A DNA stretch of 64,000 nucleotides from IMG/VR virus record IMGVR_UViG_3300023174_000036, positions 292,313 through 356,312 of that record; one strand, given 5' to 3'. Positions 15,645 to 43,038 of this stretch are shown one piece after another. The stretch's first letter is position 1, and each line of letters starts with the position of its first letter. Below the pieces are notes generated by a model. The model was not told the DNA's origin, ran no database searches, and saw nothing but the letters and a program-made list of their open reading frames with translations. The translations under genes were made by a program, and so were the position numbers.

Positions 15645-15997
15645 TTATTTGCCTAATTTGGTTGCACGTTTTGCCATTTTCTCAACTTCGCCGGTTTTTT
15701 CTCCGCCTTGTTGTTGTCTGTTTTGTTGATTATTGGTTTTTAACACAATGCCTTGACCATCAAATCGATCAATGAACTTTTTCAGTAATGGGCCTTCTTG
15801 TGGATCATCCCAACGGGCAACAAATGCATCATATGCTTCAGCATCACTGTCACCCAGTGTGGGCATGTCTCTATTGGCCAATTCAGTGTTTAATGTATCC
15901 CATCGAAGATTGCCTTCGATTCCGTTAGGGCCTTGATTGTTTGCGTCTGATTGAAGAACCCAAAGAATACGTTCTAAGGGTTCTATGTTCTCAATTA
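15645..15997 (-). CDS. probable -1 frameshift extension of the 15995-16990 protein (ORF track: 15645-15881)
   Basis: Open frame from the A10 run (15998-16007) with no canonical start codon until 15881. Confidence 0.65.
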
Positions 15998-16990
15998 TTT
16001 TTTTTTTGAAGCTAACAACATGCCCAACTTGCGGCTATAGTCAATGCTTTCACGCTTCTCACGACCCACTTCAGGTGCTGGAGGAGTTTCTTCTGCTGGT
16101 GCGGCGCCTGACATGTCAGCGGCCATGCCTGCCATTGCATCACCTCCCATGGAAGGCAATCCGCCTGTTGGTGCAGGTGCGCCCATTGTTGGTGCTTCAC
16201 CGCCTGATACTAAAGATAAGCCTGTTGATAGACCGGTTCTTGAAGTTTCTAATGCTGTGTATACTGCCTCTAATGCAGGTTTAACTGCATCTTGATATTG
16301 TTGTGCAACATCACTTCCTTGAGTTTCTCTTATAGAGTCCATTAGTTCAAGCAATTGTTCTGCTTTCATTGCGGCCACATCTTCTAGCCAGCCTGTAATA
16401 CGGTCTACCATGTCTTTTGTAGCCATGATGATTTCGGCCTTGTCTTCTTCGCCTTCAGCAAGAATATAACTTGCTTGTGATTCTGTTAAGTCGTAACGAA
16501 TTGATAATTCTGCTTTGAGTTCTGCGTTGTCGCTTTCGCCCAATGTCATTCGTTGAATTGCACTGTTGATCCAATTTGATGGAACTGAAAACCCTTTAGC
16601 ACGTTGTCCAATAATGGTTGCTTTGTATTGGTTAACACTTTCATTTTTCTTTTGTTTTTTCATTGTTTCTTCTTCGTCTTGTGATTCATCAAGATCGCAC
16701 TCACATGGCGCTTTGTGGCAATCACTGCATTTGCCTTCTTCGCGTTCCATGATTTCTTGATTGATAACATCAAGCAAAGCACGAGTCTTTTGATAAGCTG
16801 GACTTCCACTCAATGAGTCAAAACTTTCATTCATTTCGAGTTGGCTCATTTCAGTGCGTAGTTTGTTTTGCACGTCTGAAAGCTGAACATCGTTGAATTG
16901 TTCCAGTTTCAATTTGTATCCAAAGTTCTTAGCTAGACTTTCGTTGAGTCTTTTGCTAGTAACAGGTTTTGATAGTTCTCTAATTTGCAT
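15995..16990 (-). CDS. probable head-internal/scaffold-like protein
   Basis: Helical and acidic, many L/M-x-E sites, MQIREL N-terminus, late promoter. Confidence 0.6.
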   Translation of the reverse strand: MQIRELSKPVTSKRLNESLAKNFGYKLKLEQFNDVQLSDVQNKLRTEMSQLEMNESFDSLSGSPAYQKTRALLDVINQEIMEREEGKCSDCHKAPCECDLDESQDEEETMKKQKKNESVNQYKATIIGQRAKGFSVPSNWINSAIQRMTLGESDNAELKAELSIRYDLTESQASYILAEGEEDKAEIIMATKDMVDRITGWLEDVAAMKAEQLLELMDSIRETQGSDVAQQYQDAVKPALEAVYTALETSRTGLSTGLSLVSGGEAPTMGAPAPTGGLPSMGGDAMAGMAADMSGAAPAEETPPAPEVGREKRESIDYSRKLGMLLASKKK

Positions 16991-17029
16991 GATGGCGTCC
17001 TAAGATATCTTATTGTGTATTTATACTTT

Positions 17030-17485
17030 TCAGCTGGCGAAAGTCCATTTAAAAGACTGTGATATTTGATTCTTGTAATGATCCGACCTATCCTGACTGT
17101 ATTCCAACTTATTTAACAATATCAAATACCTATCATAATCAATAGACTTCTTGGCAATGTTGTTTTTGAATACTAGTGTATCACAATAATGCGTCCAATA
17201 GTGCCTATCCAACTGCTTGATACTGTTGAATTTATTAAGGTCTAATCGATGATATGCTTTTGCGGCCATAAGAGCACAGGTTTTGAGATAAAACTGTTCT
17301 ATGAATGGCCCGGATTTGTAATGTAGTGCCCAGTTTTTAAATTTGTCTAATTTAATTACAAATTCTTTATAAACAATGTCGCCGTTAGGCTGTATGCTTA
17401 TAGGCAGAGTTTTTGCAAGGTCTACTTCAAACTGTCCAGCAAGTTCTTTGATAAATTTAGGTTTGGGTTTATTTGATTTTTTCAT
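17030..17485 (-). CDS. hypothetical protein
   Basis: About 150-aa ORF in operon. Confidence 0.65.
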   Translation of the reverse strand: MKKSNKPKPKFIKELAGQFEVDLAKTLPISIQPNGDIVYKEFVIKLDKFKNWALHYKSGPFIEQFYLKTCALMAAKAYHRLDLNKFNSIKQLDRHYWTHYCDTLVFKNNIAKKSIDYDRYLILLNKLEYSQDRSDHYKNQISQSFKWTFAS

Positions 17486-17723
17486 TTGCAACTACACTAG
17501 GATCGTTCATTCCTATTTTAGTTATCAAACTCTTGCGTATCATGACCTGAACTTTGAATTGATCTTGCTCACTCAGCTGACTGAGTTTAACTGGTTGTTT
17601 TAAACGTGCTAAGAGTTTAGCTTCTTCACGGGTAGTCCAAATATCAAATCCGTCAAGGATATTGTATATTTTTTCGTTCTTTGGACTGTGTTCGTAGCCG
17701 TCTAAAAGTTCGCTTATTTTCAT
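17469..17723 (-). CDS. hypothetical protein with MKISEL leader
   Basis: ORF with ATGA overlap. Confidence 0.65.
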   Translation of the reverse strand: MKISELLDGYEHSPKNEKIYNILDGFDIWTTREEAKLLARLKQPVKLSQLSEQDQFKVQVMIRKSLITKIGMNDPSVVANEKIK

Positions 17724-18526
17724 CTTAAGCCTGCGATAGTTCTCATTTTTTCTAGTAACTCATCATCAGCTTGTTTGGCCGCAGTGTCTGCACTTGGCGT
17801 CACCGGCTTAATAGATTGTGGTCTATCCGATGGTTGCTGACTTGTTGGCATATTGTCTGCTTGAGCCGCTAGTGATTTTAAGTCGTCAATCATTTTTAAA
17901 AATTCTGGATCATTAAAAACCTGAGACATTTTTTGCATAGTCAACACTATATCAACATTACCATGCCCGTCTGGAACTATGAATTTCTTTGCAGATTCCA
18001 TATCAGCTGGACTTAGATCCGTATCGTTTTCACGTGCTGTTTGTGCCAACCCTGCCATAAACTCTTCAGGAGTCATACTGAAACTGTCGTCTTGATCTTC
18101 GTAATTATAACTGCCTGTCACATGTGGTTTCACACTGACATCTTTGATAAAGTCATCAGTAGGATCTCCGCCGATATCTTCTGCGGCCGCAAGTTCAACA
18201 TTCGCTCCTATTGCCGGACCCATTGGTTTATTAGGATCTTGATTGGCATCAGCTACTGCATCGGGATTCAAAGTAAACTTGTTAGGGTCAGTGGGATCAG
18301 CCATGACAGACGCTACTTTCTCTGGAGGCAGTATGAGTTGTGTGCCGTCTGGTTTGGCCAAAGTCAAACCAGTGTTGGGGTCGTTTTGTGTAACTTTGTA
18401 TGCTTCACCATCTTCGTTGACATCAGCTTGAGGCATGCCGGGTTTGGTAGTTTGTTGTTGTGGCTTTTTGGTATAGAGCTTGGCTCTGTGGCCTTTTTTA
18501 TGTTCTACAATATCTTTAATCTTCAT
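17720..18526 (-). CDS. acidic probable head-internal protein
   Basis: MKIKDIVE leader; C-terminal LEKMRTIAGL. Confidence 0.6.
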   Translation of the reverse strand: MKIKDIVEHKKGHRAKLYTKKPQQQTTKPGMPQADVNEDGEAYKVTQNDPNTGLTLAKPDGTQLILPPEKVASVMADPTDPNKFTLNPDAVADANQDPNKPMGPAIGANVELAAAEDIGGDPTDDFIKDVSVKPHVTGSYNYEDQDDSFSMTPEEFMAGLAQTARENDTDLSPADMESAKKFIVPDGHGNVDIVLTMQKMSQVFNDPEFLKMIDDLKSLAAQADNMPTSQQPSDRPQSIKPVTPSADTAAKQADDELLEKMRTIAGLR

Positions 18527-19223
18527 CTTGTTCCCCGAGGCTTAGTTGTTTGCTTTGTAAGTGATCAATGCGTTTGCGCAATTTGTCTATCTGTCCCCTG
18601 GAACGCAATAGCTTAAATGCCAAATTCTCAATGCTGTATTCGCCGCCAGATTCTAATCCAGCTTTGCGTAAACGATAGATGTGATCCATTGTTTCTTCAG
18701 CAGTATTTAAGTCATTTGACCGTAGAGATTGGTTTATCTTTCCTGCGTAGTTGCGGGCTTTCTTTTTGATTTCTTTAGGATCTACATCAGGAGTAAGTTC
18801 TTTAGGCTCACTCAGCCATTTGCTGTCTAATACACTATAAATGCCTGCGCTATGATGTGGCTCTGCGGCATCTTGCACATACACTTCTACAGGTATATCT
18901 TTAAGTGTAATTCGGTATTGGCTGTTGTACTGATTTTTCTTAGCATTGAACAGCTCCTTGAGATCTGGATGATCCTTGGGCATGTTGGCTATCAAGTGTA
19001 GATCTATGTCGCTGTGCTTGCTGTAACCAAAGCTGGCATTGCTGCCGCTGATGGTAATGTCAGTAAGATCCAAATTGGGTATGTTGATGTAGTCTATAAA
19101 GTGCTTGGCAATTTGTAGCAGTTTATAACGGATTTCCAGTTTGAGTTCGGTGCCGTCCCACAGGCTGGGGTTTAGCTTGTTGTGCGTGGGTGCAAATTCT
19201 GATTGAGTTTCTTGAGCATACAT
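18516..19223 (-). CDS. Pol-beta superfamily nucleotidyltransferase
   Basis: ISGSNASFGYSKHSDIDLH, VEVYVQD, GEYSIENLAFKLLR. Confidence 0.8.
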   Translation of the reverse strand: MYAQETQSEFAPTHNKLNPSLWDGTELKLEIRYKLLQIAKHFIDYINIPNLDLTDITISGSNASFGYSKHSDIDLHLIANMPKDHPDLKELFNAKKNQYNSQYRITLKDIPVEVYVQDAAEPHHSAGIYSVLDSKWLSEPKELTPDVDPKEIKKKARNYAGKINQSLRSNDLNTAEETMDHIYRLRKAGLESGGEYSIENLAFKLLRSRGQIDKLRKRIDHLQSKQLSLGEQDED

Positions 19224-19242
19224 GGTACTGTATTTAACAGAA

Positions 19243-19590
19243 TCACAAGCCTAGGAACTTTAATACATGTGGAAAATTAATAGCGTTGATCCAACCAGCA
19301 CCTGCGGCAAATGCCAAACCTACCATGGCATACATGGTGTATTTGTTTTTGATCTTTTCTAAGCTGGTGATTTTGTCAGCTAGTTCTGCATGTTGCGTGT
19401 TACTGGCTGTGGCCATTTCACACAGTTTTGTGTCTAGCAAATCACGAGTGTTGTCTAGACAGTCGTGCATTTCTTTGACGCCTACTTTGAGTTCGTCAAG
19501 TTTTTCTTCTATTTGATGTACTTTGGTTTCAACTACTGCTACACGCTCTGGTAACAGTGCTAACTGTGCTACTGCTTCTTTTGTGGCCAT
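19243..19590 (-). CDS. coiled-coil protein with C-terminal TM helix (holin/XhlA-like)
   Basis: Heptads followed by MYAMVGLAFAAGAGWI. Confidence 0.55.
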   Translation of the reverse strand: MATKEAVAQLALLPERVAVVETKVHQIEEKLDELKVGVKEMHDCLDNTRDLLDTKLCEMATASNTQHAELADKITSLEKIKNKYTMYAMVGLAFAAGAGWINAINFPHVLKFLGL

Positions 19591-19700
19591 TATTAGGCTT
19601 CTCCAATGTTATAAGTCAGGGACTCGCTCCGAGTCATGTGCCTAGTGTATGATTGAATGCCTAAGTGTTTACGTGGATAAATTGCCTACAATGTTATTTA

Positions 19701-20102
19701 TTACTTTTGATGAAAAACAATGTTTTTGTTTTGGCCTTCGGTGACAAACACAGCAAAACGTTGTTCCATGAGTTCGTCAAGACCTGATATGTAGGGCACA
19801 CCGTTGAAATCGTCTTTGAGATATCCTACTGCGTCATCATCTTTCTGATATAAGAAATCACGCTCTGTACTGAAATCAAAACGCCACACTTTGACAACGT
19901 CTTCCATGTCAAATCCTATTACAGTACCTTTGACTGTGGTTGCTATGGGTTTTTGCACATACGAAATGTTAGCTCGCATGCCAAGTGTTTGTACTACTGA
20001 ACTAAAATTTTGTTCTTTCCAACGTAAGGATTCTTTACCAGCTTCATGACGATATTGTCCTGTGCTGGTTATGTCTATCAATGTGTATAGTTTATATTCC
20101 AT
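19701..20102 (-). CDS. hypothetical late protein
   Basis: YTLIDITSTG N-terminus; TAAATA 4 nt before ATG. Confidence 0.65.
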   Translation of the reverse strand: MEYKLYTLIDITSTGQYRHEAGKESLRWKEQNFSSVVQTLGMRANISYVQKPIATTVKGTVIGFDMEDVVKVWRFDFSTERDFLYQKDDDAVGYLKDDFNGVPYISGLDELMEQRFAVFVTEGQNKNIVFHQK

Positions 20103-20119
20103 GCAGTATTTAACAGTCG

Positions 20120-20147
20120 TAAAAAAGCCTACTATAAAAGTAGGCTT
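20120..20147 (-). terminator. intrinsic terminator
   Basis: AAGCCTACT/AGTAGGCTT hairpin plus U-tract on the minus strand. Confidence 0.7.
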
Positions 20148-20177
20148 AGTCTTCCCATCCCTGAGAATTAAAACAAA

Positions 20178-20585
20178 TTACAGTGTTGTACCAATTGCAA
20201 TTGTTGGAATTGAGATTGTAGTTGCGGCACTTGCATTTAAAGCGGCATTGATTGCGGCTTCTGCTAAACCAAAACCTGTACCTTGTGTATTACCACTGTC
20301 AGCACCGTTTGCTGTATCTGCGGCGATAACAGCAATAAAGCCTGTAGCTACTGGTGCGTATACTGCATAAACTTCTACAAAGTTTTGTAATGTACGAACT
20401 GCTTTGCTGTACAAACTTGCTGGTAGTGTGTAAGACAATGAGCTGGTAGCGCCGTCTTGATAACGCATGTCGTTTGAACCGCCTGTTACTAACACTTTAA
20501 TTACTGTTAGTTCACGAGTACCAAACTGTGTGCTTTCTGTTGTTTTTAGCCAATTGGCTGATGTTGTTGAGTCTACTGATGGCAT
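20178..20585 (-). CDS. probable small virion (decoration-type) protein
   Basis: Ala/Thr-rich, strong AGGAG SD, own terminator. Confidence 0.55.
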   Translation of the reverse strand: MPSVDSTTSANWLKTTESTQFGTRELTVIKVLVTGGSNDMRYQDGATSSLSYTLPASLYSKAVRTLQNFVEVYAVYAPVATGFIAVIAADTANGADSGNTQGTGFGLAEAAINAALNASAATTISIPTIAIGTTL

Positions 20586-20666
20586 AATATTTCTCCTCTA
20601 TATGCTTTTTAGAACACCCTCTGTGTCCTTTGTATATTTATTTACCTATTTTGGTAAAAACCTGCT

Positions 20667-21593
20667 TTAAATGCTAACGATTTGACGAATAGCTTTGAAC
20701 CAATCCACTGACCCTTCTTTGAGGAAACGTTCTGGGTATTTCTTCTGCATATCGCCTTTGAACTGTGCTAAACGTGGGTTGTCTATGCCTTGTGGAATGT
20801 GTTGCAGTATACGTTCCACTGTGGCTAACCAGTCCTGATTGGCAGATGGATCATTGAACAAGCGTTGTGCTATCTTATGTACATCACGCTCCAACACTTC
20901 GCCATTGGCACGACTTTTCAGTGCGCCGCCCATGCCGTAGTACAAGAACGCTTTTTCAAGATGATTGGGAATACTGTTGGCCAAGCTGGACAGCGCCATT
21001 TGCTGGTCTTGTCCGTCATATTGATAGTCTTGTGAGTATTCGTGTTCGTGATGTTTAACTGTGGTGGCCGCATGTTCTGTAGTTGGAAAATCCACTTGAT
21101 AATAAGCCGCAACTTCAGTACCCAGTGCTGGCACGTTAACAGTATAGCCTGCTGGAATTCCAAGGTGTACTTGCTCGCCAGTCTGTGTTACACTGTCAAA
21201 ACTTTGGCTGAGATACTGTGCCAATGCGCTACGGATTGCACCGTCGTCAGCATCTGCTTCTAAACCTAACTTAGGAGCAATTTCTTTACTGCTGATATGA
21301 ATGTCTATATCGCCAGCAGTTGTTTTGACACTGCCCATTTTGTAGTAAGGATGGTTTGGATGCCACGAACCTGCTGATCCGCTGGTCCAGTGTCCTTTGG
21401 TGCCAAGTGCATCCAACACTGGCTGTACTTGTTGTACAATAGCATCGTAAGCCTTGCGTGGAATACGCACAATAACACCTTTGATGTTTTGTGGATCTAT
21501 CTTCTTTTTTGGTTTGGCAGTAGGGCCTAATCGTGCGGCATTGATTTCTTCAACGCCATATAGCCCTGCTGGTTCTAATGCAAATCCGCTCAT
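20667..21593 (-). CDS. second nucleotidyltransferase-like protein
   Basis: SGSAG...TAGDIDIH...YYQVDF. Confidence 0.65.
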   Translation of the reverse strand: MSGFALEPAGLYGVEEINAARLGPTAKPKKKIDPQNIKGVIVRIPRKAYDAIVQQVQPVLDALGTKGHWTSGSAGSWHPNHPYYKMGSVKTTAGDIDIHISSKEIAPKLGLEADADDGAIRSALAQYLSQSFDSVTQTGEQVHLGIPAGYTVNVPALGTEVAAYYQVDFPTTEHAATTVKHHEHEYSQDYQYDGQDQQMALSSLANSIPNHLEKAFLYYGMGGALKSRANGEVLERDVHKIAQRLFNDPSANQDWLATVERILQHIPQGIDNPRLAQFKGDMQKKYPERFLKEGSVDWFKAIRQIVSI

Positions 21594-21841
21594 TCTTTAC
21601 TCTCTTGTATGCGCTTGATGCCACGTTTGAATTTGCTGGCATCAGCTGTTCTAATGCTGTTGATGAATCTGCGCTCTAACTCAGCGGCCGTTTCGATATC
21701 ATAGCTGGCCCTAATCTGCTCCAATAAGTTCACAGCACTTTGGATGATGTTGGAACCGCGGCTTTCGATAACCAAGTCAGTGTCTCGGTTAATGCCTAAA
21801 TCGCTTAATTCCTGTAAAATACTTCTTGTTGTTTTGCGCAT
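21590..21841 (-). CDS. conserved hypothetical protein
   Basis: MRKTTRSILQEL...ELERRFINSIR. Confidence 0.7.
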   Translation of the reverse strand: MRKTTRSILQELSDLGINRDTDLVIESRGSNIIQSAVNLLEQIRASYDIETAAELERRFINSIRTADASKFKRGIKRIQESKE

Positions 21842-21986
21842 ATATGATCTTCCAAGTGTATTTATAGTATACTATGCTTGATTAATAATATCAAATAACT
21901 TGGTAAATGTTGCAGTGCCATGTATACTTGCTAAATACTCAGTAGAAACCATGAGTAGCTACACACTTAACACACAGGAAAGTAAA

Positions 21987-24582: not shown

Positions 24583-24993
24583 TTATTCTACTGATTCTTT
24601 ATCAAAGTAGTCTGGATGCTGTTTGCCCCAGTTGCGCATGATTACGGCGGCCTGTGCGTTAGCATCATTTTCTTGTGGTGATCCAGTCGAGCCTGCGTCA
24701 TCGTCAGCCAGCTCATCATTCAAGTCTTGTTTGAAGTGTACCATTTCGTGTGCCAATGTTCTACAGATATCGTTGATGTGACGATTCTTCACAGTAATAG
24801 TGATGTGTTCAGCACCTGGCTGATATCCACCAAATGATTTGCGTTCCACACTTTGCTTTGAATCAAACACAAAGTCAAACTTTGGCAGTGTTTTGAGTTC
24901 CAAGTGTTCAGCGGCAAAGCGCACAAAGTCCAATAGGATTGGATACGTATCCTTTTTACCAAGGCCTTCAGTGAGTATTTCTTTAACTTTCAT
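24583..24993 (-). CDS. HExxH zincin-like protein with capsid-targeting-like leader
   Basis: RTLAHEMVH...ENDANA; MKVKEILTE. Confidence 0.7.
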   Translation of the reverse strand: MKVKEILTEGLGKKDTYPILLDFVRFAAEHLELKTLPKFDFVFDSKQSVERKSFGGYQPGAEHITITVKNRHINDICRTLAHEMVHFKQDLNDELADDDAGSTGSPQENDANAQAAVIMRNWGKQHPDYFDKESVE

Positions 24994-28124: not shown

Positions 28125-28406
28125 TTATCGGCTAATAAGTTGTTTGATTGCTTGGAGTAAGCTGTCGTCGGCAGATTTAGTTTCACTGCCAATATTATCG
28201 TCCTGCGTCATTTTGTCAATAACAGGGCTTTCTTTACCTAATTCGGCTTTGTGTAACTCTAAATGCTGTTGTAACGGAGGAACCATTACAGGATTTGATT
28301 GAAACTCTGGCTCGTTTTGTTCTTGGCCTGTTGAAATTTCAGGCTCGCCATCACCATTAATCTTAATGTTGATTGGAATATTAATAGTGAATTCTTTTGC
28401 TCTCAT
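28125..28406 (-). CDS. small protein with MRAKEF leader
   Basis: MVPPLQQHLELHK motif; late promoter. Confidence 0.65.
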   Translation of the reverse strand: MRAKEFTINIPINIKINGDGEPEISTGQEQNEPEFQSNPVMVPPLQQHLELHKAELGKESPVIDKMTQDDNIGSETKSADDSLLQAIKQLISR

Positions 28407-33838: not shown

Positions 33839-34055
33839 TCAGTTGTGTAACACCAAACACTAGAGCCGCGGTAGCTTGTTGATCTGCGGCGCCTTCTTCT
33901 AATTTCTCTGTACTGATCAAATCTTGTAAGATTTCTTTGGCTTCGCTTGGACTCAGTTGTCCAGCACCCACAGCTTCATGTACTTGTAATGCATATTGGG
34001 CACGTTCTGCGGCCCACGGATGACCACTATTCATTAGTTCTGCTAGTACGCTCAT
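33825..34055 (-). CDS. hypothetical protein
   Basis: TAATG-coupled to the upstream lipoprotein. Confidence 0.65.
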
Positions 34056-34438
34056 TAGAATCTCCCTTGTACTGAACCTGTTAAGATTTCAGTTTGTTGT
34101 TTAATAATTTTTACTTTGAGGTCGCAATACAATGGACTTACTGGACCAGTTTTCAAACGATCTTGATACTCTTTAACTGTTGTTGTCAATGTACTTGTTA
34201 ACTTGCTAATATCTCTTGTTGGTTTAGTCTTGGCGTAAATGTCAAACCACTCTACATTTAACGACAATGCATTTAACTGTGCGGCTTGGTCGCCTTTACA
34301 ATCAAAGTGATTAACTTGTACTTGTATGTCTGTAATTACTTTTGCTTGGTTAACGTCCCAACGACTTGGAATCTTTTCCATTATGCCGGCACAGCCTGTT
34401 AAACTTAAAAATGCTATAATTGTTATTAGTTTTTTCAT
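34055..34438 (-). CDS. lipoprotein
   Basis: Lipobox LTGC after hydrophobic signal. Confidence 0.75.
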   Translation of the reverse strand: MKKLITIIAFLSLTGCAGIMEKIPSRWDVNQAKVITDIQVQVNHFDCKGDQAAQLNALSLNVEWFDIYAKTKPTRDISKLTSTLTTTVKEYQDRLKTGPVSPLYCDLKVKIIKQQTEILTGSVQGRF

Positions 34439-34845
34439 TTTGCTTCATCATCCGTAATTGGTCCACCGACTACCCAAGCATCGCATGTGCGTAAGCTGGC
34501 ACATTTGAATTTTAAAAACTGGCAATAGCCTAAATCACCTGCACCTATTGTTGCTTTGGCATCTACATCGCCTATGCCTTTTTCTATACAGTCTAGAACT
34601 TTTGACGTTTGATCAAATGCCGCGCAGTTGCCGCATCTTGATTGTTTAACTGATTCTATATCATCAGTGTTCCATTTGTCAGCAATGCGTTGCCAGTATT
34701 CGTCATTGGGCAGTTGTGGATTCAATGGACCGTAGTTGTTTTCATCAATGGCCTTCTGACGATTCTTTAAATTCAGTTCAATGTCCTGTGTTGCGGGTGG
34801 ACAGCCTTTTTCCAAAGCTTCAATTAGTGTTATAAAGTTTCTCAT
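34435..34845 (-). CDS. Cys-rich conserved phage protein
   Basis: CPPATQDI, CGNCAAF, GYC..KFKCAS.RTCDAW. Confidence 0.7.
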   Translation of the reverse strand: MRNFITLIEALEKGCPPATQDIELNLKNRQKAIDENNYGPLNPQLPNDEYWQRIADKWNTDDIESVKQSRCGNCAAFDQTSKVLDCIEKGIGDVDAKATIGAGDLGYCQFLKFKCASLRTCDAWVVGGPITDDEAK

Positions 34846-35771
34846 TTGTGTTTAGCTCTTCCTGCTTTCATGTTAGCTAGCCAATGTGCCAGCTGTCCTT
34901 TACGTCCGCCTTGTTTGGCAGTTTTACGTAATGAACTTATACTTGCTTTAGTATTAATGCCGTGGCGTTTGGCATCTCCCTTGTCTTGTGGATTACGTCC
35001 ATCAGCAAAGTTCTCATCTCGTTTGGTATATACTTGCTGTGCTTTTCTATCAATTTCGCCACGTTCTATTTTATCAGGGTCTTTGGCTTTTTCTTTTTCA
35101 AAGTACTTACGCATTTCTTCCGAAGACACTTTGGGTTTCTTAGCTACCTTTGTTGGTGTTGTTAAGAAACCCATTATACCTTCGTTTGTTCTATGATATT
35201 CGCTTGCTTCGCCTTCTAGACTAACGTGCCAAGCATAGAACTTAGTCTGCGGATACTCATCTTTGAGTTCCACAAACGATTCTAAGTTAGGCACAGCATC
35301 ATCATACATGATAGCTTTTGTATAATGTCCTTGGTCCATTAACTTACGAATAATAATCTTTTTCTTTTCTTCTGTTTGCATTTTGCCGGTCATGTTGCCC
35401 GCACGGTACACATGCACTTTGCCCATGTCTACTCCATACTTGCGGAATGTATCAAGAAATAGTTCTTTATCGTCAAAGTCAGCACGGGCAGTTACCATTA
35501 CCACTTTGTTACCTGTGGCAATGTCATGCTTTAACTGATCCATCATTGGTATAATTGGTTTACTGTTATGAAAGAAATCGTGTGCGTTGCGAAAGTTTTC
35601 AAAGTCAAAAGTTTCGCCGGGTTGTAGTTTGTAGTGTGTGAAGTCGTGACTATTGAGTTCTTTAATAACTTGACCATCTTTGATTACATTTACTTTTGTC
35701 TGGGTATGAACAAGAGTGTCATCTATATCAAAGATAACCAATTTCTTTGGCTGAAACTCTTGTGCTCTCAC
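34842..35771 (-). CDS. HAD-family phosphatase fused to basic C-terminal modules
   Basis: FDIDDT, VTAR, K, MYDD; MRAQEF leader. Confidence 0.78.
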   Translation of the reverse strand: MRAQEFQPKKLVIFDIDDTLVHTQTKVNVIKDGQVIKELNSHDFTHYKLQPGETFDFENFRNAHDFFHNSKPIIPMMDQLKHDIATGNKVVMVTARADFDDKELFLDTFRKYGVDMGKVHVYRAGNMTGKMQTEEKKKIIIRKLMDQGHYTKAIMYDDAVPNLESFVELKDEYPQTKFYAWHVSLEGEASEYHRTNEGIMGFLTTPTKVAKKPKVSSEEMRKYFEKEKAKDPDKIERGEIDRKAQQVYTKRDENFADGRNPQDKGDAKRHGINTKASISSLRKTAKQGGRKGQLAHWLANMKAGRAKHK

Positions 35772-36473
35772 TTAGCAATTCCATTTACGCAGTGCTAGAG
35801 CTTTGCGTGTTGGCTTACCGTTGGGTTTTTTCATTGGGCCTTTGACTCCGCCCATTCTAGCACAGAATGATTTACGACGCTTGGCTGCTTTACTGCCTGA
35901 TTTTAGTTTGCTGGGTTTTGTTGTTACGGCCATTTGCAGTTTGCTACCTGGATTCTCTCTGCGATAGCTGGCAACACCTTTGGCATTTAGGCCGCCTTTC
36001 TTACTCTTACCTGCACTCCTACGCCAGGCAGCAGATTCGTCTAGTAATTCGTGATCATCAACTGATTCAAAGTCTTCCCAAATTTGTTCTGTATCAACAC
36101 CATGTGCTTCTGCAAGTGCTTCTACCATTTCTTCAATTATGTCAAACAGTTGGTTAGGATCTATACTTTCATTGGGCACACAGTTGCGTACCTGGCCGCC
36201 ATTCTTGCCTTTCTTAGTGCCAGCGGCATGATGTCCTGGCCAGCATTTGGTTACACCGTTTGAATCTTTGGCACCTTTTTTGATTTCATTCAGTGTGCCG
36301 TGCGATTGGCACATGCCGCAATCTTCACAAACCATCTCCATTTCAACGGATTCCGTGTGCTTCTTTTTGCCAGCACAATGAGCCTTTTGACTAAAGCCTT
36401 TAGGGTGTGAGCAGTTAATACTTTTCTTGTACTTTTGACTCCATCCTTCAGTAATAAATTCAGTTGCTCTCAT
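35772..36473 (-). CDS. modular basic head-internal protein
   Basis: MRATEFITE leader; several short Cys/Lys-rich modules. Confidence 0.7.
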   Translation of the reverse strand: MRATEFITEGWSQKYKKSINCSHPKGFSQKAHCAGKKKHTESVEMEMVCEDCGMCQSHGTLNEIKKGAKDSNGVTKCWPGHHAAGTKKGKNGGQVRNCVPNESIDPNQLFDIIEEMVEALAEAHGVDTEQIWEDFESVDDHELLDESAAWRRSAGKSKKGGLNAKGVASYRRENPGSKLQMAVTTKPSKLKSGSKAAKRRKSFCARMGGVKGPMKKPNGKPTRKALALRKWNC

Positions 36474-36611: not shown

Positions 36612-37427
36612 TCAGTCAGCTTTGCCACATTTTGCTCTTTTTGCGTTTGTTAATGCTCCAAAATCAACTGGCCATTCTTGCCCTGGCGCTAGTTCAACAG
36701 CACCAGCTGGAAATTTATAGTCAACTCCTGCTAGTTTTTCTATTTCTACAATGGGCTTGCGGAACACAGTAAGGTCATTGCCCAAATTAACGTAAGGTTT
36801 GGTATGTGGAAATACCCATCCAGCAATTTGTCGAGTTTGATTGTTAATTACAATTTTGTAGTAGCCATGCGGAACAATAACTCCGGCGCCAATTGTAGGA
36901 TCACCAGCGCCATATAATGCTCCCACGAATACGGTATAACTCTGGTTGGTTTGAACTGCCCAACCTCGGACGGATGTCTCCAACAATTTCCAAATTCCCC
37001 TGTTTAAAGAGCCGTGTTGAGGGTACATGTTTGTCATTAAAAAACTTTCATATTCCACTTGTTGGCTCCAGCTTAGGTCGCCGTCTGGAGCGGCATGTCC
37101 TTTGTCGTAACCAGTGCCAGCATAGTCATCTGGTCTAGCACCAGTTCCGCCTAGACTTTGATCAGCTACAAATGCATTGGTGCGTGGAAAACAACCCAAT
37201 GCGTTTTGTGGCAACAGTGTGTAAGCCACATAAACTGGAATCTTTACTGGAGCATCATATGCCACTAGATACGCTTCTCTGCAAATAGGTTGTGCTGTGC
37301 GGGCTGTTTGAGCAAAGCCGTAAGGGCTGTGGACAGCGCAGGCTTGTACGGGTAATGGAGCACGTTGCTCCCAGGCTTGGGCCAATCCTGCTGTAAACAG
37401 CAAGATCAAAGCTAATAATCGTTTCAT
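36612..37427 (-). CDS. secreted DNA/RNA non-specific endonuclease (NucA/Serratia type)
   Basis: Signal peptide; YDKGHAAP, TNMYPQ..LNRGIWKLLE, VPHGYYK. Confidence 0.9.
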   Translation of the reverse strand: MKRLLALILLFTAGLAQAWEQRAPLPVQACAVHSPYGFAQTARTAQPICREAYLVAYDAPVKIPVYVAYTLLPQNALGCFPRTNAFVADQSLGGTGARPDDYAGTGYDKGHAAPDGDLSWSQQVEYESFLMTNMYPQHGSLNRGIWKLLETSVRGWAVQTNQSYTVFVGALYGAGDPTIGAGVIVPHGYYKIVINNQTRQIAGWVFPHTKPYVNLGNDLTVFRKPIVEIEKLAGVDYKFPAGAVELAPGQEWPVDFGALTNAKRAKCGKAD

Positions 37428-39707: not shown

Positions 39708-41024
39708 TTAAGCAGATTTTTTATCTGTTCCTGAACCAAATAAACGCATTGCACTTTCAGCAAATCCCAATCTTTCAGGATAACTTTTTGGACTGGCCAC
39801 TTCATATTTGTTCATAATAATCTCAACACATTTTGCAAGATTATTTTTGTTAGCTTCTAATTCAGGCAATACGTGTTTGTATTTTCCAGTCAGCTCATGC
39901 CATGTGAAATCTAATTGCAATTCAAGATCATGCCATTTCTTTTTAAGTTTCTTTGCAAAATTAGCAAGATTTTGTAGCCTATCCATGCGCCATTGCACGA
40001 TACCTCTGGCATTTTCGTTTTTGTTGTGTGCGGCGGTATTAACTCTTGACTCAGTGTAAATATTTCCAACAAATGCCGCACACTGATTATCATTAAGTCC
40101 TTTGCCTTTGAAAAACTCAAATACATCGCTGGCCGAATCAACATTTCTTATTTCATATTTGCCTGAAGATCGTTTCTTGATTGGTGCAGGTGATGGTGCT
40201 GTATCTGGCTTTACATCTGGCTTTACATCTTGTTTGGGAGCTATTGCAGTACTACCACTTGATGGAATTGATATAACATCACCAGGATAAATTCGATCAG
40301 GGTTTTTAATTTGTTTATTGGCGGCAATCAAATCTGCCAATGCAACACCGTGAGCTTTGGCTATCTTAGTAAGATTGTCTCCAGATACCACAGTGTAATC
40401 GCCAGTAGAAACTTTTGGAGATTGATTTGGTTTAACAACATCAGGAGTAATTATGTCGGCTTTTGCAACATTAGAACCAGCCGCTAGCAATTTTTTATAA
40501 CCGCCATATGGGTGAATGCCATCGCCTTTTCCACTATGCATACCCGAGTCGTAGTCTTCTAATGGGCCAAGAAAAGTTGCGCCAAACGATTGTGCCATTG
40601 ATTCCAATCGTTCGTTAACTCCGGTTAAATCAACTCGATATTTTTTGCCGCCGGTCCAACTTGTTCCTGGAAATGCTATTGACTTAGTACTACCTGTTCC
40701 TACCAGTGCTACTGTTGCACCTGCAGCCTTGAGAGCTTTCAATTGGTCTTCAACTGGTTCCAATCCGCCATTACCTGTTTTTTTAATTCCACCTTCTAAT
40801 TCAATAGGAGAACTATTACTTGCTCCACTACTTAAGATAACAGTGGCACCTTTGGCTTTTCCAGATTTAATAAATGCATTAACTCGTTTTAAAACTTCAA
40901 CGGTGGATATGCCACCTTTTGCATAAGGCTCGCTGCCTCCAATACCAACAGCAATGCTATCACCTATGATAACAACAGACTGTTTATTTTCTTTTAAAAC
41001 TAATTTAAATTCTGTAAATCTCAT
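39708..41024 (-). CDS. SGNH-like + LysM + phage tail lysozyme-like protein
   Basis: IIGDSIAVG...DGIHP; YTVVSGDNLTKIA...NPDRIYPG; GNIYTES...GIVQW...QLDF. Confidence 0.82.
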   Translation of the reverse strand: MRFTEFKLVLKENKQSVVIIGDSIAVGIGGSEPYAKGGISTVEVLKRVNAFIKSGKAKGATVILSSGASNSSPIELEGGIKKTGNGGLEPVEDQLKALKAAGATVALVGTGSTKSIAFPGTSWTGGKKYRVDLTGVNERLESMAQSFGATFLGPLEDYDSGMHSGKGDGIHPYGGYKKLLAAGSNVAKADIITPDVVKPNQSPKVSTGDYTVVSGDNLTKIAKAHGVALADLIAANKQIKNPDRIYPGDVISIPSSGSTAIAPKQDVKPDVKPDTAPSPAPIKKRSSGKYEIRNVDSASDVFEFFKGKGLNDNQCAAFVGNIYTESRVNTAAHNKNENARGIVQWRMDRLQNLANFAKKLKKKWHDLELQLDFTWHELTGKYKHVLPELEANKNNLAKCVEIIMNKYEVASPKSYPERLGFAESAMRLFGSGTDKKSA

Positions 41025-42007
41025 CGTTGATTCTTCCTTGTGCCGTAGTCGGGCAAAGGCCCACCATACTTACGTCCCTTAATCTTTTTGCCGCCAACAG
41101 TCACACGTACTTTACGTTTACCAGCAGTAATTAAATGACTCTTCTCGCCGTCCCTTGCCCGGAGTCCTTGACTTTTACAACTGGCTAATTGGCTTGCACC
41201 TAACTCGTGATCAGGTTTGCCACCAGTACATAATGCACGACTTGCTTTGCCTTCTTCTGCCAAGTCATCTGGAGTATCAACACTTGCTACATATTGATCA
41301 GCATTGCCTTCAATATCCGCTTCAGCTCTTTTGTTTAGACTGGATGGTATACCTTTCTTTAATTTTTCAATATAGGCCTTAAATGCCGAAATACGTTCTG
41401 TTAATCCATTGGTGCCGCCATTAACTCTAACTGATACACCATGTATGTCGTTGGCGCGATAGTTGGGTCTGATAAATGTATTCCAGAACCACAATGCTGA
41501 ATCAGCGGCAACTTGTTTATTTGTTGCAACTAATTCAGGATTCTTAACAATATTTTTGCAGGAAGGAACTGCGGCCGCACATTTGGTATAATTCTCTCTA
41601 CCAGTCAAGTGCATGAATCCTCTGCCTTTGAATAAAGGTCCGTCGCCTCTGTATTTGTTACCAAGTATTAGTTTGCCTTCGTATGCAGAACCATCTGCCC
41701 ATTCTTCTAAACTAGTGAACCCAGCTGTTTCAACTTTGGACTGTGCCATAAAGTTAGCTAACTGTACGCCTTTGATGCCATCGGCTTTGGCTTTGGATTC
41801 AATGTATGCACCTAAGCCTTTAGGTTCCAATGCAACATGTATTGGCGGAGTTCCAGCAGGACGTTGAGGTTTAGCGTTATTAGGTTTAGGTGCGGGTGTG
41901 GCATTTTTAGACTGCGCCGTTAACCGGTTTGCTAAGTCGCCGATTGGATCCACGGTGTCTCTGGTAGGCCCATCTCTTTCAAATAAAATAAAATCTTTAG
42001 CTCTCAT
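41021..42007 (-). CDS. GH19 chitinase/lysozyme-like protein with basic C-terminal module
   Basis: FMAQSKVETAGF, FKGRGFMHLTGRENY, SALWFW, VNGGTNGLTER. Confidence 0.87.
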   Translation of the reverse strand: MRAKDFILFERDGPTRDTVDPIGDLANRLTAQSKNATPAPKPNNAKPQRPAGTPPIHVALEPKGLGAYIESKAKADGIKGVQLANFMAQSKVETAGFTSLEEWADGSAYEGKLILGNKYRGDGPLFKGRGFMHLTGRENYTKCAAAVPSCKNIVKNPELVATNKQVAADSALWFWNTFIRPNYRANDIHGVSVRVNGGTNGLTERISAFKAYIEKLKKGIPSSLNKRAEADIEGNADQYVASVDTPDDLAEEGKASRALCTGGKPDHELGASQLASCKSQGLRARDGEKSHLITAGKRKVRVTVGGKKIKGRKYGGPLPDYGTRKNQR

Positions 42008-42391
42008 TTAGACCCCGTATTGATTACGTTTTGGTTTGGATACAGGACTAACTGTATTAACATCTGTTTCTGTACTCTTACTACTGGCAATACGGGTAGC
42101 TTTAACTCCCATTAGTTTATCTGCAAGTCTAATAGTTTCTTCATCGTCGGGAGAAAATGTTATTAATGATAAGTTTTCTGCCCATGCACTTTCCTGATCA
42201 AAATCTATATCATGATCCTTGTTGGCTCTTGCCGCCGCTATTGCCATACCATAACGATATTGCATGTAAGGGTCTGTGTTACGCAAGTCTCGTTGTACAA
42301 ACGCACCAGGCAAACTGTTAGATACTTGTGCATCCACTTTGCCAAATTTACCGTGTAGTTTAGTTTCTGGAAGGAATTCTTTAGCTCGCAT
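42008..42391 (-). CDS. hypothetical protein with MRAKEF leader
   Basis: NTDPYMQYRYG, VNTVSPV..PKRNQYGV. Confidence 0.7.
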   Translation of the reverse strand: MRAKEFLPETKLHGKFGKVDAQVSNSLPGAFVQRDLRNTDPYMQYRYGMAIAAARANKDHDIDFDQESAWAENLSLITFSPDDEETIRLADKLMGVKATRIASSKSTETDVNTVSPVSKPKRNQYGV

Positions 42392-43038
42392 TATGCTGTG
42401 TTCCTCATAGGGTCTACTGGTCTACCAGCAACATGTGTTTCCCAATGTAAATGCGGTCCAGTGCTGTGTCCAGTATTGCCTGACAACGCAATCACTTCTC
42501 CAGCAGTAACCTGATCATTGGTTTGAACTAAAATTTTAGAAAGATGGAAGAATTTATGCACAACTCCGTCAGCATCCAGTATTACATAGTTGCCTTCACC
42601 ACTTTTCGAACTGCCAGCGCCGGTAACTACTCCATCCGCTGGCGCAACTACCTTGGTACCTGTAGGTACTGAAAAATCTGTACCGTTATGATTGCGGGCC
42701 GAGCCTACACTAGTTCTGTAACCGAATGGACTAGATACTGGCCCTTCAACTGGTACAATTGATGGTTCTTGTTTGCTTAATATCCTGCGAGCTGGGCGAT
42801 TCTTTTTTTCGTATGATTTAATTGCAAGAGGATCTGGTTTTTGAGTGTCTTTAGGATCTATGCCCTTGGCATAAGCATCTATAGCGGCTTGGGTATAAGG
42901 ACCTACAATGCCGTCTACACCGTCTCCATTGGGTCCGTACGGACCTAGATCATAGCCCAGATCTCGCAACTTTTCCTGAGTTTTTACAACGGCAGGGTCA
43001 CTAGTGGCTTCTAAAATAAGGAATTCTTTTGCTCTCAT
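42391..43038 (-). CDS. PG-binding domain + M23 metallopeptidase
   Basis: DGIVGPYT; HNGTD, HLS, GNTGHSTGPHLH. Confidence 0.9.
   Translation of the reverse strand: MRAKEFLILEATSDPAVVKTQEKLRDLGYDLGPYGPNGDGVDGIVGPYTQAAIDAYAKGIDPKDTQKPDPLAIKSYEKKNRPARRILSKQEPSIVPVEGPVSSPFGYRTSVGSARNHNGTDFSVPTGTKVVAPADGVVTGAGSSKSGEGNYVILDADGVVHKFFHLSKILVQTNDQVTAGEVIALSGNTGHSTGPHLHWETHVAGRPVDPMRNTA

What the first reader, a model, noticed from the sequence alone, without database searches (positions are those of the whole stretch)
15995..43038. Shared capsid-targeting-like N-terminal tag on about 13 unrelated proteins: a packaged enzyme cargo system
Seen: proteins of unrelated folds start with M-(R/K/Q)-x-x-(E/D)-(F/I/L)-x(1-5)-E or a close variant: MRAKEFLILE (M23, 43038), MRAKEFLPE (42391), MRAKDFILFE (GH19, 42007), MRFTEFKLVLKE (LysM/lysozyme, 41024), MRATEFITE (36473), MRAQEF (HAD, 35771), MRNFITLIE (34845), MRAKEF (28406), MKVKEILTE (HExxH, 24993), MKIKDIVE (18526), MKISEL (17723), MQIREL (16990), and more loosely MYAQETQSE (nucleotidyltransferase, 19223). 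Established: T4 internal proteins carry a 10-residue capsid targeting sequence (MKTYQEFIAE) that the gp21 prohead protease removes after (I/L)-x-E. Inference: this phage uses a portable tag to load three peptidoglycan hydrolases, a phosphatase, a metallopeptidase-like protein and possibly a nucleotidyltransferase into the head for injection.
Basis: partly seen in the sequence, partly recalled or inferred. Interest (0 to 1): 0.78.

Follow-up and report, generated by a model that had tools for sequence, protein, structure and literature searches.

The report
Capsid-targeting-like tag on jumbo-phage proteins
A giant T4-related phage from a metagenome puts a nine-residue address label, very like the one phage T4 uses to pack proteins into its head, on about a dozen unrelated proteins, including cell-wall-cutting enzymes; the same label is common in uncultured relatives, so it may allow a phage's packed, possibly injected, proteins to be predicted from sequence.

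Summary
Seven unrelated ORFs, all inside the window, begin with M-R-x-x-[E/D]-F. No internal Met of the 429 called proteins has this motif. Four more ORFs begin with an MK[I/V]x[E/D][I/L] variant that swaps with the strict form between orthologs. Five of the six ATG-start strict tags are followed by [L/I/V/F]-x-E.

- **T4-type head genes.** The window is the end of a 356-kb T4-type jumbo phage. It has a gp21-family prohead protease and a Gp23 capsid protein, which carries a conserved L-x-E-G site near its N-terminus.
- **Spread.** The tag reads MRAKEF[ILVF]xE in 66 of 80 proteins fetched from IMG/VR. These fall into 26 unrelated families. All four complete genomes tested encode the protease.
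- **Virion link.** In the cultured relative PA5oct, 6 of 10 proteins with the loose tag were detected in virions by mass spectrometry, against 93 of 461 overall (p = 0.006). One is a homolog of a window protein.

The best explanation is a T4-like capsid targeting sequence with a built-in protease site. Packing in the head, cleavage and injection of the enzymes are inferred, not shown. This is a new variant of a known kind.

The parts
42391..43038 (-). Strict tag MRAKEFLILE, then a PG_binding_1-like domain and an M23 peptidase (215 aa)
   Evidence: PSSM 23.2. The ortholog in G001 keeps the tag.
42008..42391 (-). Strict tag MRAKEFLPE on a 127-aa protein. It belongs to the most common MRAKEF cargo family (YR[FY]G...SPV.KPKRN.YGV); function unknown.
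   Evidence: AF2 model has low confidence over tag residues 7-13. No fold match.
41021..42007 (-). Strict tag MRAKDFILFE, then GH19 and a very basic C-terminal module of about 75 aa. In relatives this module also occurs as a stand-alone tagged mini-protein.
39708..41024 (-). Strict tag MRFTEFKLVLKE, then an N-terminal region with a GDS motif (possibly SGNH-like; motif only), LysM and Phage_lysozyme2 (438 aa)
35772..36473 (-). Strict tag MRATEFITE, then a Cys-rich region and a basic DUF6321 domain. DUF6321 is the 'T4-GC119 structural protein' domain of cyanomyoviruses.
34842..35771 (-). Strict tag (GTG start) V/M-RAQEF fused directly to a HAD phosphatase, with DxD at residues 15-17 and no nearby [LIV]xE. 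It has a basic C-terminal module.
28125..28406 (-). Strict tag MRAKEF on an acidic 93-aa protein with no nearby cleavage motif. It lies between a tail-fibre gene and a putative structural gene.
24583..24993 (-). Loose tag MKVKEILTE on a 136-aa HExxH protein. The ortholog in G001 starts MRAKEFLAE.
17720..18526 (-). Loose tag MKIKDIVE on a 268-aa protein. The PA5oct virion protein EST35_0238 starts VKIKDILVE.
17469..17723 (-). Loose tag MKISELLD on an 84-aa protein with no clear cleavage motif
15995..16990 (-). MQIRELSKP on a 331-aa protein. It is a homolog of the PA5oct virion protein EST35_0237 and matches a PHROG 'virion structural protein' family.
17018..17025 (-). TATAAATA (T4 late-promoter consensus), 35 nt upstream of the 16990 start
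   Evidence: The genome holds 15 copies, 13 of them within 120 nt upstream of a same-strand start.
21590..21866 (-). An 83-aa 'virion structural protein' (phrog_11854) preceded by TATAAATA. It heads the minus-strand cluster 21841-15995, which is syntenic with the PA5oct virion-protein cluster EST35_0230-0239.
34435..34845 (-). MRNFITLIE on a 136-aa protein. Membership is doubtful: it has L-I-E at residues 7-9 but lacks the [ED]-[F/I/L] core.
   Evidence: PSSM -2.6; no orthologs found.
18516..19223 (-). MYAQETQSE on a 235-aa protein. It is not a tag carrier and is not recognisable as a nucleotidyltransferase.

Best explanation
The shared N-terminus is a capsid targeting sequence of the T4 type.

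- **The signal.** It is a two-part signal of about nine residues with the consensus M-R-A-x-E-F-[I/L/V]-x-E. A looser form, M-K-[I/V]-x-[E/D]-[I/L]-x-x-E, appears to serve the same role.
- **Targeting (inferred).** The first part (basic residue, acidic residue, then Phe/Ile/Leu) would dock a newly made protein onto the scaffolding core of the assembling prohead.
- **Cleavage (inferred).** The [I/L/V]-x-E at the end would be cut after Glu by the phage's gp21-family prohead protease. That would free the mature protein inside the head.
- **Uncut carriers (inferred).** Proteins whose tag lacks the site (the HAD phosphatase and the 93-aa protein) would be packed uncut.
- **Cargo.** In this phage it comprises three peptidoglycan hydrolases, a HAD/PNK-like phosphatase, an HExxH protein, a basic DUF6321 protein, a member of an abundant 125-aa family of unknown function, and several conserved virion proteins.
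- **Basic tails.** Several cargo proteins also have very basic C-terminal modules, as expected for proteins that sit in packaged DNA.
- **Delivery (inferred).** The cargo would leave the head with the DNA at infection.

**Shown:** the motif itself, its N-terminal specificity, its portability across unrelated proteins, the presence of the protease and of matching sites in head proteins, and virion association of loose-tag proteins in PA5oct.
**Inferred:** docking, cleavage, head location and injection.
For: 1. **T4-type head machinery.** Peptidase_S77 protease (E = 6.5e-27) and Gp23 capsid protein. The gene order portal, small core protein, core protein, protease, scaffold, capsid protein matches T4's 20-67-68-21-22-23.
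2. **Similarity to T4.** The T4 CTS is MKTYQEFIAE. T4 propeptides read directly from the T4 record are gp24 MAKINELLRE and Alt MELITELFDE. In T4, targeting depends on residues 4 and 7 and processing on residues 8 and 10 (PMC9026906). The Phe and the I-x-E map onto F6, [ILV]7 and E9 here.
3. **Cleavage motif.** Five of six strict tags have [LIVF]xE ending at residues 8-13, against 38 of 413 other N-termini (p = 5e-5).
4. **Pattern across IMG/VR.** 66 of 80 MRAKEF proteins read MRAKEF[ILVF]xE. In 110 members of one family, residues 1-7 and 9 are nearly invariant while residue 8 (P2) has 2.0 bits of entropy.
5. **Same site type in head proteins.** The capsid protein has a conserved L-x-E-G at residues 16-19 in five phages. 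The protease N-terminus has [IV][IVL]E. The scaffold-like protein has 21 [LIV]xE sites, 5.7 per 100 aa against 1.26 genome-wide.
6. **Portability.** The IMG/VR MRAKEF proteins fall into 26 unrelated clusters. Strict and loose forms swap between orthologs, and the tag is gained or lost on DUF6321 proteins.
7. **Experimental link.** Six of 10 PA5oct CDSs with the loose tag carry the ESI-MS/MS virion note, against 93 of 461 overall (p = 0.006).
8. **Homologs and synteny in PA5oct.** EST35_0150 is a homolog of the G000 ORF in the gp67 position. EST35_0237 is a homolog of window ORF 15995-16990. The window cluster 15995-21841 is syntenic with the PA5oct virion-protein cluster.
9. **Structural context in the window.** Tail fibre, head-fibre-like and 'virion structural protein' families lie nearby. 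TATAAATA promoter-like sites are present.
10. **Not needed for lysis.** An untagged 209-aa GH19 paralog could serve as the endolysin.
11. **Basic tails.** C-terminal 60-aa charge is +11, +13 and +18 on three strict-tag proteins. Only 2.5% of other proteins reach +8.
12. **Flexible tag.** The tag region is low-confidence in the AF2 model.
Against: - There are no proteomic or N-terminal data for any strict-tag (MRAxEF) protein. No cultured phage examined carries that form.
- The PA5oct enrichment rests on 10 proteins. Virion mass spectrometry does not separate head from tail, and that list includes some likely contaminants.
- The tag is one residue shorter than the T4 CTS and lacks the equivalent of Tyr4.
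- Two strict tags have no cleavage motif.
- Peptidoglycan hydrolases packed inside a myovirus head have no obvious route to the periplasm.
- Transcription timing of the 46185-39708 operon is unknown. It has only a one-mismatch late-promoter match.
- The complex prediction gave no answer.
Confidence: 0.7

Rival explanations
1. The tag is a general virion-assembly or propeptide signal that is not specific to the head interior. It might mark tail, baseplate or decoration proteins, or be a chaperone-recognition motif. On this view the peptidoglycan hydrolases are tail-associated lysins.
For: - M23, Phage_lysozyme2 and GH19 domains occur mostly in tape-measure and tail-lysin proteins.
- Tagged genes sit beside tail-fibre genes.
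- PA5oct mass spectrometry does not localise proteins within the virion.
Against: - The conserved [ILV]-x-E is the gp21-type site. In T4 this protease acts only inside proheads.
- The same site type is conserved in the capsid protein, the protease and the scaffold.
- A homolog of the small core protein in the gp67 position carries the tag in PA5oct.
Confidence: 0.12
2. The tag is a removable inhibitory propeptide or a timing or degradation signal. It would keep lytic enzymes inactive, or mark proteins for a protease, without directing them into the particle.
For: A cleavage-type motif directly precedes catalytic or binding domains. Several carriers are potentially harmful hydrolases.
Against: - A nine-residue flexible extension is unlikely to inhibit folds as different as M23, GH19, HAD and a 125-aa helical protein.
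- Many carriers are not enzymes.
- Loose-tag proteins are found in PA5oct virions.
- Some tags lack the site altogether.
Confidence: 0.08
3. The shared sequence is mainly a DNA-level recombination cassette. A short conserved 5' coding stretch lets genes be swapped between phages, as proposed for T-even internal-protein loci, and it has no protein function of its own.
For: - Module shuffling is extensive among tagged proteins.
- The exact 18-nt string recurs in 120 or more IMG/VR stretches.
Against: - Upstream DNA is not conserved and the codons vary synonymously.
- The conservation pattern is at amino-acid level: P3 and P1 are fixed and P2 is free.
- The strict and loose forms differ in DNA but keep the same chemistry.
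- This role could coexist with targeting.
Confidence: 0.05
4. The motif reflects selection on the first codons for efficient translation initiation (A-rich and unstructured), not a protein signal.
For: Lys at position 2 is enriched genome-wide (64 observed against 27 expected). The tag codons are A-rich.
Against: - This does not explain the invariant Phe6 and Glu9 or the hydrophobic residue 7.
- It does not explain restriction to about 2-3% of genes, clustered in structural regions.
- It does not explain the enrichment in PA5oct virions.
Confidence: 0.03

Closest known systems
[quoted passage not shown]
   Same: - An N-terminal label of about 10 residues on otherwise unrelated proteins.
- The core E-F-[I/L]-x-E ends in the (L/I)-x-E protease site.
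- The phage has gp21-family protease, scaffold and Gp23-family capsid genes.
- Some cargo is strongly basic.
   Different: - It is one residue shorter and has no Tyr4 equivalent.
- It occurs in a distant jumbo-phage lineage (PA5oct and Rak2-like relatives), not the T-evens.
- There are about 11 carriers per genome, many of them multi-domain enzymes of 200-440 aa rather than small basic proteins.
- Some tags lack the cleavage site.
- Packaging has not been tested.
N-terminal propeptides of T4 gp24 (MAKINELLRE), Alt (MELITELFDE), gp67, gp68 and gp21
   Same: - Short N-terminal [acidic]-[L/F]-x-x-E propeptides on head proteins, read directly from the T4 record.
- Alt is a packaged and injected enzyme.
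- The loose form here (MKINEILKE, MKIKDIVE) resembles the gp24 propeptide.
   Different: The T4 propeptides differ from one another. Here a single consensus is reused almost verbatim on many proteins and across many genomes.
Ejection proteins of phiKZ-like and SPN3US giant phages with protease-removed propeptides
   Same: Many head-internal proteins in giant phages are processed by a gp21-related protease after x-x-E motifs.
   Different: Those propeptides are mostly 80-130 residues long and are not a short portable consensus. That lineage is unrelated to this phage.
Internal core or ejection proteins with cell-wall hydrolase domains in podoviruses (T7 gp16 type); from general knowledge, not tested here
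   Same: Peptidoglycan-degrading activity carried inside the capsid and released at infection.
   Different: Those are essential core-stack proteins with no short cleavable address tag. Here the host phage is a contractile-tail phage.

Membership tests
T4-type capsid targeting sequence / internal head proteins | Short (about 10 aa) sequence at the extreme N-terminus, shared by proteins that are otherwise unrelated | tested here: met
   - 7 strict and 4 loose carriers have no mutual similarity apart from the tag.
- IMG/VR MRAKEF proteins fall into 26 unrelated clusters.
- N-terminal against internal Met: p = 2.5e-5 to 8e-8.
T4-type capsid targeting sequence / internal head proteins | Sequence resemblance to the T4 CTS, including the aromatic targeting residues (Tyr4, Phe7) | tested here: inconclusive
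   E-F-[I/L]-x-E is identical to T4's E-F-I-A-E. However, the tag is one residue shorter and has no Tyr4 equivalent.
T4-type capsid targeting sequence / internal head proteins | Ends in a (L/I)-x-E site for the prohead protease | tested here: met
   - 5 of 6 strict tags, against 9% of other N-termini (p = 5e-5).
- 66 of 80 IMG/VR tags.
- P2 is variable while P3 and P1 are fixed.
- Not met for 35771 and 28406.
T4-type capsid targeting sequence / internal head proteins | Phage encodes a gp21-family prohead protease and T4-type scaffold and capsid proteins | tested here: met
   - PF03420 at 91.9 bits and PF07068 at 273.7 bits.
- 4 of 4 complete tag-bearing genomes have PF03420.
- A conserved L-x-E-G site is present in the capsid protein.
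T4-type capsid targeting sequence / internal head proteins | Tag is sufficient and necessary for incorporation into the prohead core; cargo is found in heads | not testable with these tools
   Indirect evidence only: 6 of 10 loose-tag proteins of PA5oct were detected in virions by ESI-MS/MS (p = 0.006).
T4-type capsid targeting sequence / internal head proteins | Tag is removed during head maturation and cargo is injected with the DNA | not testable with these tools
   No N-terminal or injection data exist. The PA5oct paper does not discuss processing and its supplements are not held.
Endolysins (lysis-cassette peptidoglycan hydrolases) | A single soluble or signal-anchored hydrolase used with a holin for lysis from within | tested here: inconclusive
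   - Three different hydrolases sit in one operon and all carry the tag.
- None has a signal or SAR sequence (direct reading of the sequence).
- A separate untagged 209-aa GH19 paralog exists at G000 178461-179090.
- No holin was searched for.
phiKZ/SPN3US-type ejection proteins | Long (about 80-130 aa) N-terminal propeptides in a phiKZ-related genome | tested here: not met
   The tag is about 9-12 residues long, and catalytic or binding domains start by residues 14-15. The capsid protein is of the T4/PA5oct type.

The most novel reading that the evidence does not exclude
MRAxEF[ILV]xE would be a sequence-readable address label used by a large, almost entirely uncultured clade of 340-525-kb T4-related jumbo phages. 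The label would load dozens of unrelated protein families into the capsid for delivery at infection. These include peptidoglycan hydrolases, a phosphatase, amidoligase-like and deaminase-like enzymes, and an abundant 125-aa family. A simple N-terminal motif scan would then enumerate the 'first-strike' injected proteome, including candidate anti-defence factors, of uncultured phages. It would also provide a second, orthogonal CTS for protein packaging in engineered phages.
Probability: 0.45. Interest if true: 0.8.

Novelty: new variant of a known kind. Interest (0 to 1): 0.66.

Why it matters
In T4 the CTS is the only known way to pick out proteins that travel inside the head and are injected ahead of gene expression. 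Those proteins include anti-restriction factors, and the CTS has been used to pack foreign proteins.

If the label found here works the same way, four things follow:
1. The mechanism extends from the T-even phages to a distant, environmentally abundant jumbo-phage lineage.
2. Injected cargo can be predicted directly from metagenomic sequence.
3. Cargo can be large enzymes, including cell-wall hydrolases. That raises a concrete question about where head-borne proteins are released.
4. PA5oct is a cultured, tractable system in which to test it.

I found no description of this motif in the searched literature.

Tried and rejected
- **Closest relatives.** Megablast of the region against cultured phages found nothing.
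- **Strict-tag pattern scans in relatives.** PA5oct, CBB, Vibrio phage 2.275.O and Phosso showed only chance-level matches that are not at ORF starts. The strict form is therefore absent from the cultured relatives examined.
- **The 127-aa family.** tblastn against cultured phages found nothing.
- **Complex prediction.** Protease plus residues 1-30 of the M23 protein returned 'no answer' (score 0.00). This counts neither for nor against.
- **Fold of the 127-aa protein.** AF2 model pLDDT 75.7, pTM 0.40. Foldseek against the PDB gave no match below E = 4.
- **Domain searches with no result.** Pfam and PHROGs found nothing for the 399-aa tag-bearing protein beside the head module, nor for the 160-172-kb cluster.
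- **PA5oct supplementary peptide tables.** These are not held, so N-terminal peptide coverage could not be checked.
- **Baseplate lysozyme.** PF00959 gave no match in the genome. The PF06714 search was uninformative because its controls did not ring.
- **Rejected: DNA repeat or promoter cassette.** Upstream DNA is unrelated.
- **Rejected: chance.**
- **Rejected: signal peptide or SAR domain.** The tag is charged and has at most four consecutive hydrophobic residues.

Full report
**What the window is.** The window is the last 64 kb of a single 356,312-bp IMG/VR virus record with 39.9% GC, estimated 96% complete. The genome encodes a gp21-family prohead protease (Peptidase_S77, 91.9 bits, G000 81781-82407) and a T4 Gp23-family major capsid protein (273.7 bits). 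The head-gene order is portal, small core protein, core protein, protease, scaffold-like protein, capsid protein. This is the same order as T4's 20-67-68-21-22-23. By capsid protein, the nearest cultured phages are Sinorhizobium phage Phosso (78%), Vibrio phage 2.275.O (73%), Pseudomonas phage PA5oct (72.5%) and the CBB/BF/Yen9-04 group (71%). The phage is therefore a T4-related jumbo phage of the PA5oct/Rak2-like assemblage.

**Checking the observation.**
- A strict form, [M/V]-R-x-[K/T/Q]-[E/D]-F, opens seven ORFs (43038, 42391, 42007, 41024, 36473, 35771, 28406). A six-frame scan finds it at no other credible start in the whole genome.
- Among 429 called proteins, MR..[ED]F occurs at 6 N-termini and at none of 2075 internal Met (p = 2.5e-5). 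The loose pattern [RK]..[ED][FILV] occurs at 14 N-termini against 5 internal Met (p = 8e-8).
- A weight matrix trained only on tags from related contigs scores the six ATG-start members at 16-24 bits. The maximum over 1866 internal-Met windows is 5.9.
- The 35771 gene starts with GTG. Its ortholog in a relative has ATG at the same place.
- The 50 nt upstream of the starts are unrelated, and the tag codons differ synonymously. Conservation is therefore at the protein level.
- Apart from the tag, the carriers in the window show no similarity to one another.
- Pfam and PHROGs confirm M23, GH19, LysM plus Phage_lysozyme2 and a HAD/PNK-like phosphatase, give a weak M91-like hit on an HExxH protein, and add DUF6321 for 36473.
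19223 (MYAQETQSE) does not fit the motif and is not recognisable as a nucleotidyltransferase. 34845 (MRNFITLIE) lacks the core and has no orthologs with which to test it.

**The loose form is the same signal.** Related IMG/VR contigs carry the tag on orthologs and on additional proteins, covering 5-10% of the genes in these fragments. Orthologs swap forms. The HExxH protein starts MKVKEILTEGL here and in G002 but MRAKEFLAEGL in G001. A DUF6321 protein starts MKINEIINEDWNKVN in one contig and MRATEFITEDWNKVN in another.

**A second, built-in element.** Five of the six ATG-start strict tags are followed by [L/I/V/F]-x-E ending at residues 8-13, against 38 of 413 other N-termini (Fisher p = 5e-5). 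I then scanned IMG/VR for the exact string ATGAGAGCNAAAGAATTY.
- In the 80 loci returned, 81 of 85 matches sit at ORF starts.
- 66 of the 80 complete proteins read MRAKEF[ILVF]xE. Position 7 is I, L or V in 67 and position 9 is Glu in 67.
- After masking the tag, these proteins fall into 26 unrelated clusters.
- The largest cluster has 44 members and includes window ORF 42008-42391. That family has 486 clusters at 90% identity in the protein collection, all unnamed.
- In 110 members of 127 aa, residues 1-7 and 9 are almost invariant, while residue 8 is among the most variable columns at 2.0 bits.

Fixed P3 and P1 with a free P2 is what recognition of (L/I)-x-E predicts.

**Link to the head protease.** The capsid proteins of this phage, PA5oct, 2.275.O, CBB and Phosso share L-x-E-G at residues 16-19 (ALLEG, ALTEG, KLTEG, KLVEG, ALCEG). 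The proteases share [I/V]-[I/V/L]-E near residue 18. The scaffold-like protein has 21 [LIV]xE sites, or 5.7 per 100 aa, against 1.26 genome-wide. All four complete tag-bearing IMG/VR genomes tested (338-525 kb) encode Peptidase_S77. Each of these complete genomes has 5-11 matches to the ATG-MG-N7-GA-N-TTY pattern, against 0-2 for the reversed control.

**Comparison with T4.**
- The T4 CTS is MKTYQEFIAE (bioRxiv 10.1101/2021.01.19.427310).
- It directs otherwise unrelated internal proteins into the scaffolding core (PMC3012670; PMC9958956; PMC5694885).
- Mutagenesis of IPIII placed targeting mainly at residues 4 and 7 and processing at residues 8 and 10. Asp10 blocked cleavage but not targeting (PMC9026906).
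- With a one-residue gap, MRATEFITE aligns to MKTYQEFIAE with identical M, E, F, I and E.
- T4 propeptides read directly from NC_000866 (gp24 MAKINELLRE, Alt MELITELFDE, gp21 ...LLIE, gp22 ...LIAE) resemble the loose form.
- The differences are that the tag here is one residue shorter and lacks a Tyr4 equivalent.

**Experimental anchor in a cultured relative.** The PA5oct GenBank record marks proteins detected in purified virions by ESI-MS/MS. The paper reports 93 such proteins among 461 coding regions and does not discuss propeptides (PMC7318152). I scanned PA5oct for annotated starts matching the same loose pattern and checked each in the annotation.
- Ten CDSs match.
- Six are virion proteins: EST35_0150 MKINDIITE, 0205 MKLFEVFTLYE, 0230 MRLDEIQSK, 0238 VKIKDILVE, 0380 VRLNEINLIE and 0381 MKILEFNLTE.
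- The hypergeometric p is 0.006. With the cleavage motif also required, 5 of 7 match (p = 0.0045).
- EST35_0150 lies between the portal and protease genes. It is homologous to the G000 ORF in the gp67 position at 83446-83685, which starts MILRELFY.
- EST35_0237, also a virion protein, is a homolog of window ORF 15995-16990.
- The PA5oct virion-protein cluster 0230-0239 lies next to the exonuclease ortholog, as the window cluster 15995-21841 does.
- PHROGs places 15995-16990 and 21590-21841 in 'virion structural protein' families and 25008-28103 among tail fibres.
- TATAAATA, the T4 late-promoter consensus, occurs 15 times in the genome. Thirteen copies lie within 120 nt upstream of a same-strand start. 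These include 16990, 21841 and a 399-aa protein beside the head module that begins MKVLDVILE.

**Other features of the cargo.**
- Three strict-tag proteins end in extremely basic modules. C-terminal 60-aa net charge is +11, +13 and +18, whereas only 2.5% of other proteins reach +8.
- These modules are shuffled among tagged proteins in relatives. In some relatives they occur as 'tag plus module' mini-proteins.
- DUF6321 is the domain of the cyanomyovirus 'T4-GC119 structural protein', which lies within the neck and terminase gene region (next to gp15/gp16 in P-SSM2). Those proteins lack this tag.
- Elsewhere in the clade the tag precedes LysM plus GH19, amidoligase-like domains and DUF6267.
- An untagged 209-aa GH19 paralog in the genome could be the endolysin.
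- The AF2 model of the 127-aa protein has its lowest confidence over tag residues 7-13.

**Interpretation.** The most economical reading is a T4-type capsid targeting sequence with an integral prohead-protease site, reused on many cargo proteins. The shown and inferred steps are separated in the Best explanation section.

Several points remain open:
- No strict-tag protein has ever been examined experimentally, and no cultured phage examined carries the strict form.
- Two strict tags lack a site.
- How head-borne peptidoglycan hydrolases would reach the cell wall from a contractile-tail phage is unexplained.
- The timing of the 46185-39708 operon is unknown.

The rivals are a general virion or tail signal, an inhibitory propeptide, a recombination cassette and a translation-initiation effect. 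Each explains part of the data. None explains the amino-acid-level P3/P1 pattern together with the protease, the matching sites in head proteins and the PA5oct virion enrichment.

**Novelty.** The mechanism is known from T4. CTS-like sequences in close T-even relatives are also known. I found no report of this motif ('MRAKEF' has 0 papers) or of CTS-type tags in this jumbo-phage lineage. I rate it a new variant of a known kind: a different consensus, a distant lineage, a broad environmental spread and an enzyme-rich cargo.

Noticed in passing
G000 169308-170402 (outside the window): A 364-aa protein starts MKLREMFEGE and has a GxFxPxHxGH nucleotidyltransferase-like motif (no Pfam hit). At residues 232-248 it holds an internal relic of the tag (LRAFQLAE...MLE), followed by a full copy of the 125-aa MRAKEF cargo domain. 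It looks like a fusion in which the tag became an internal linker, and possibly an internal cleavage site.
   Followed up: partly
G000 160491-171987 (outside the window): A run of 11 ORFs has no homologs in PA5oct or 2.275.O. Several have tag-like starts (MNFRELINK, MRITDVEPG, MKMHELDE, MKLREMFEGE, MRIRELLE). Two are homologous to MRAKEF-tagged proteins of other IMG/VR contigs. This may be a second cargo cluster.
   Followed up: partly
G000 89082-90281 (outside the window): A 399-aa protein of unknown family starts MKVLDVILE|G. It lies beside the head module and has a perfect TATAAATA 29 nt upstream.
   Followed up: partly
G003 48714-49427 (related IMG/VR contig; L047): A tagged 237-aa protein (MRFVEFDRSHD) has an HAE...PC..C motif typical of cytidine/dCMP deaminases. 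It carries the same basic C-terminal module as the window's HAD protein. The deaminase reading rests on the motif only.
   Followed up: no
window 6320-7001 (-) and 8403-8645 (-): The phage encodes Fe-S cluster assembly proteins (NifU_N/IscU-like at 181 bits and an IscA-type Fe-S_biosyn protein) and a glutaredoxin. They lie near a large ORF (10411-12732) that may be a ribonucleotide reductase subunit; that identity is a guess from its N-terminal sequence and was not checked with any tool.
   Followed up: partly
window 43035-46185 (-): A sugar-nucleotide gene set lies directly upstream of the tagged hydrolase genes, in the same orientation and with overlapping stops and starts. Pfam confirms one NAD-dependent epimerase (43035-43859), a PfkB kinase, a cytidylyltransferase-like protein (an HldE-like pair) and a cupin. 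A second epimerase-like ORF (45361-46185) is inferred only from its similar N-terminus.
   Followed up: partly
window 36612-37427 (-) and 34055-34438 (-): A DNA/RNA non-specific endonuclease (Endonuclease_NS) with a classical signal peptide, and a small protein with a lipoprotein-type signal, sit among the tagged genes.
   Followed up: no
window 1-1089 (-) / G000 291497-293401: A phage-encoded 634-aa protein starts with an N-terminus typical of Hsp70/DnaK. This is recognised from the sequence only and was not scanned. A DnaJ-like start (MTDYYQTLGV) occurs at G000 175426-176277.
   Followed up: no
window 12950-14863 (-) and 28440-30363 (-): A pectate-lyase-like protein with an Mtd_N domain is a probable tail spike. 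Two adjacent paralogs both start MAANGIS, one with a Laminin_G_3 lectin-like domain. A 591-aa protein has a head-fibre-like segment. The region is rich in receptor-binding and structural genes.
   Followed up: partly
whole genome G000: TATAAATA occurs 15 times, 13 of them 8-51 nt upstream of a same-strand start codon. This phage probably uses T4-type late promoters.
   Followed up: partly
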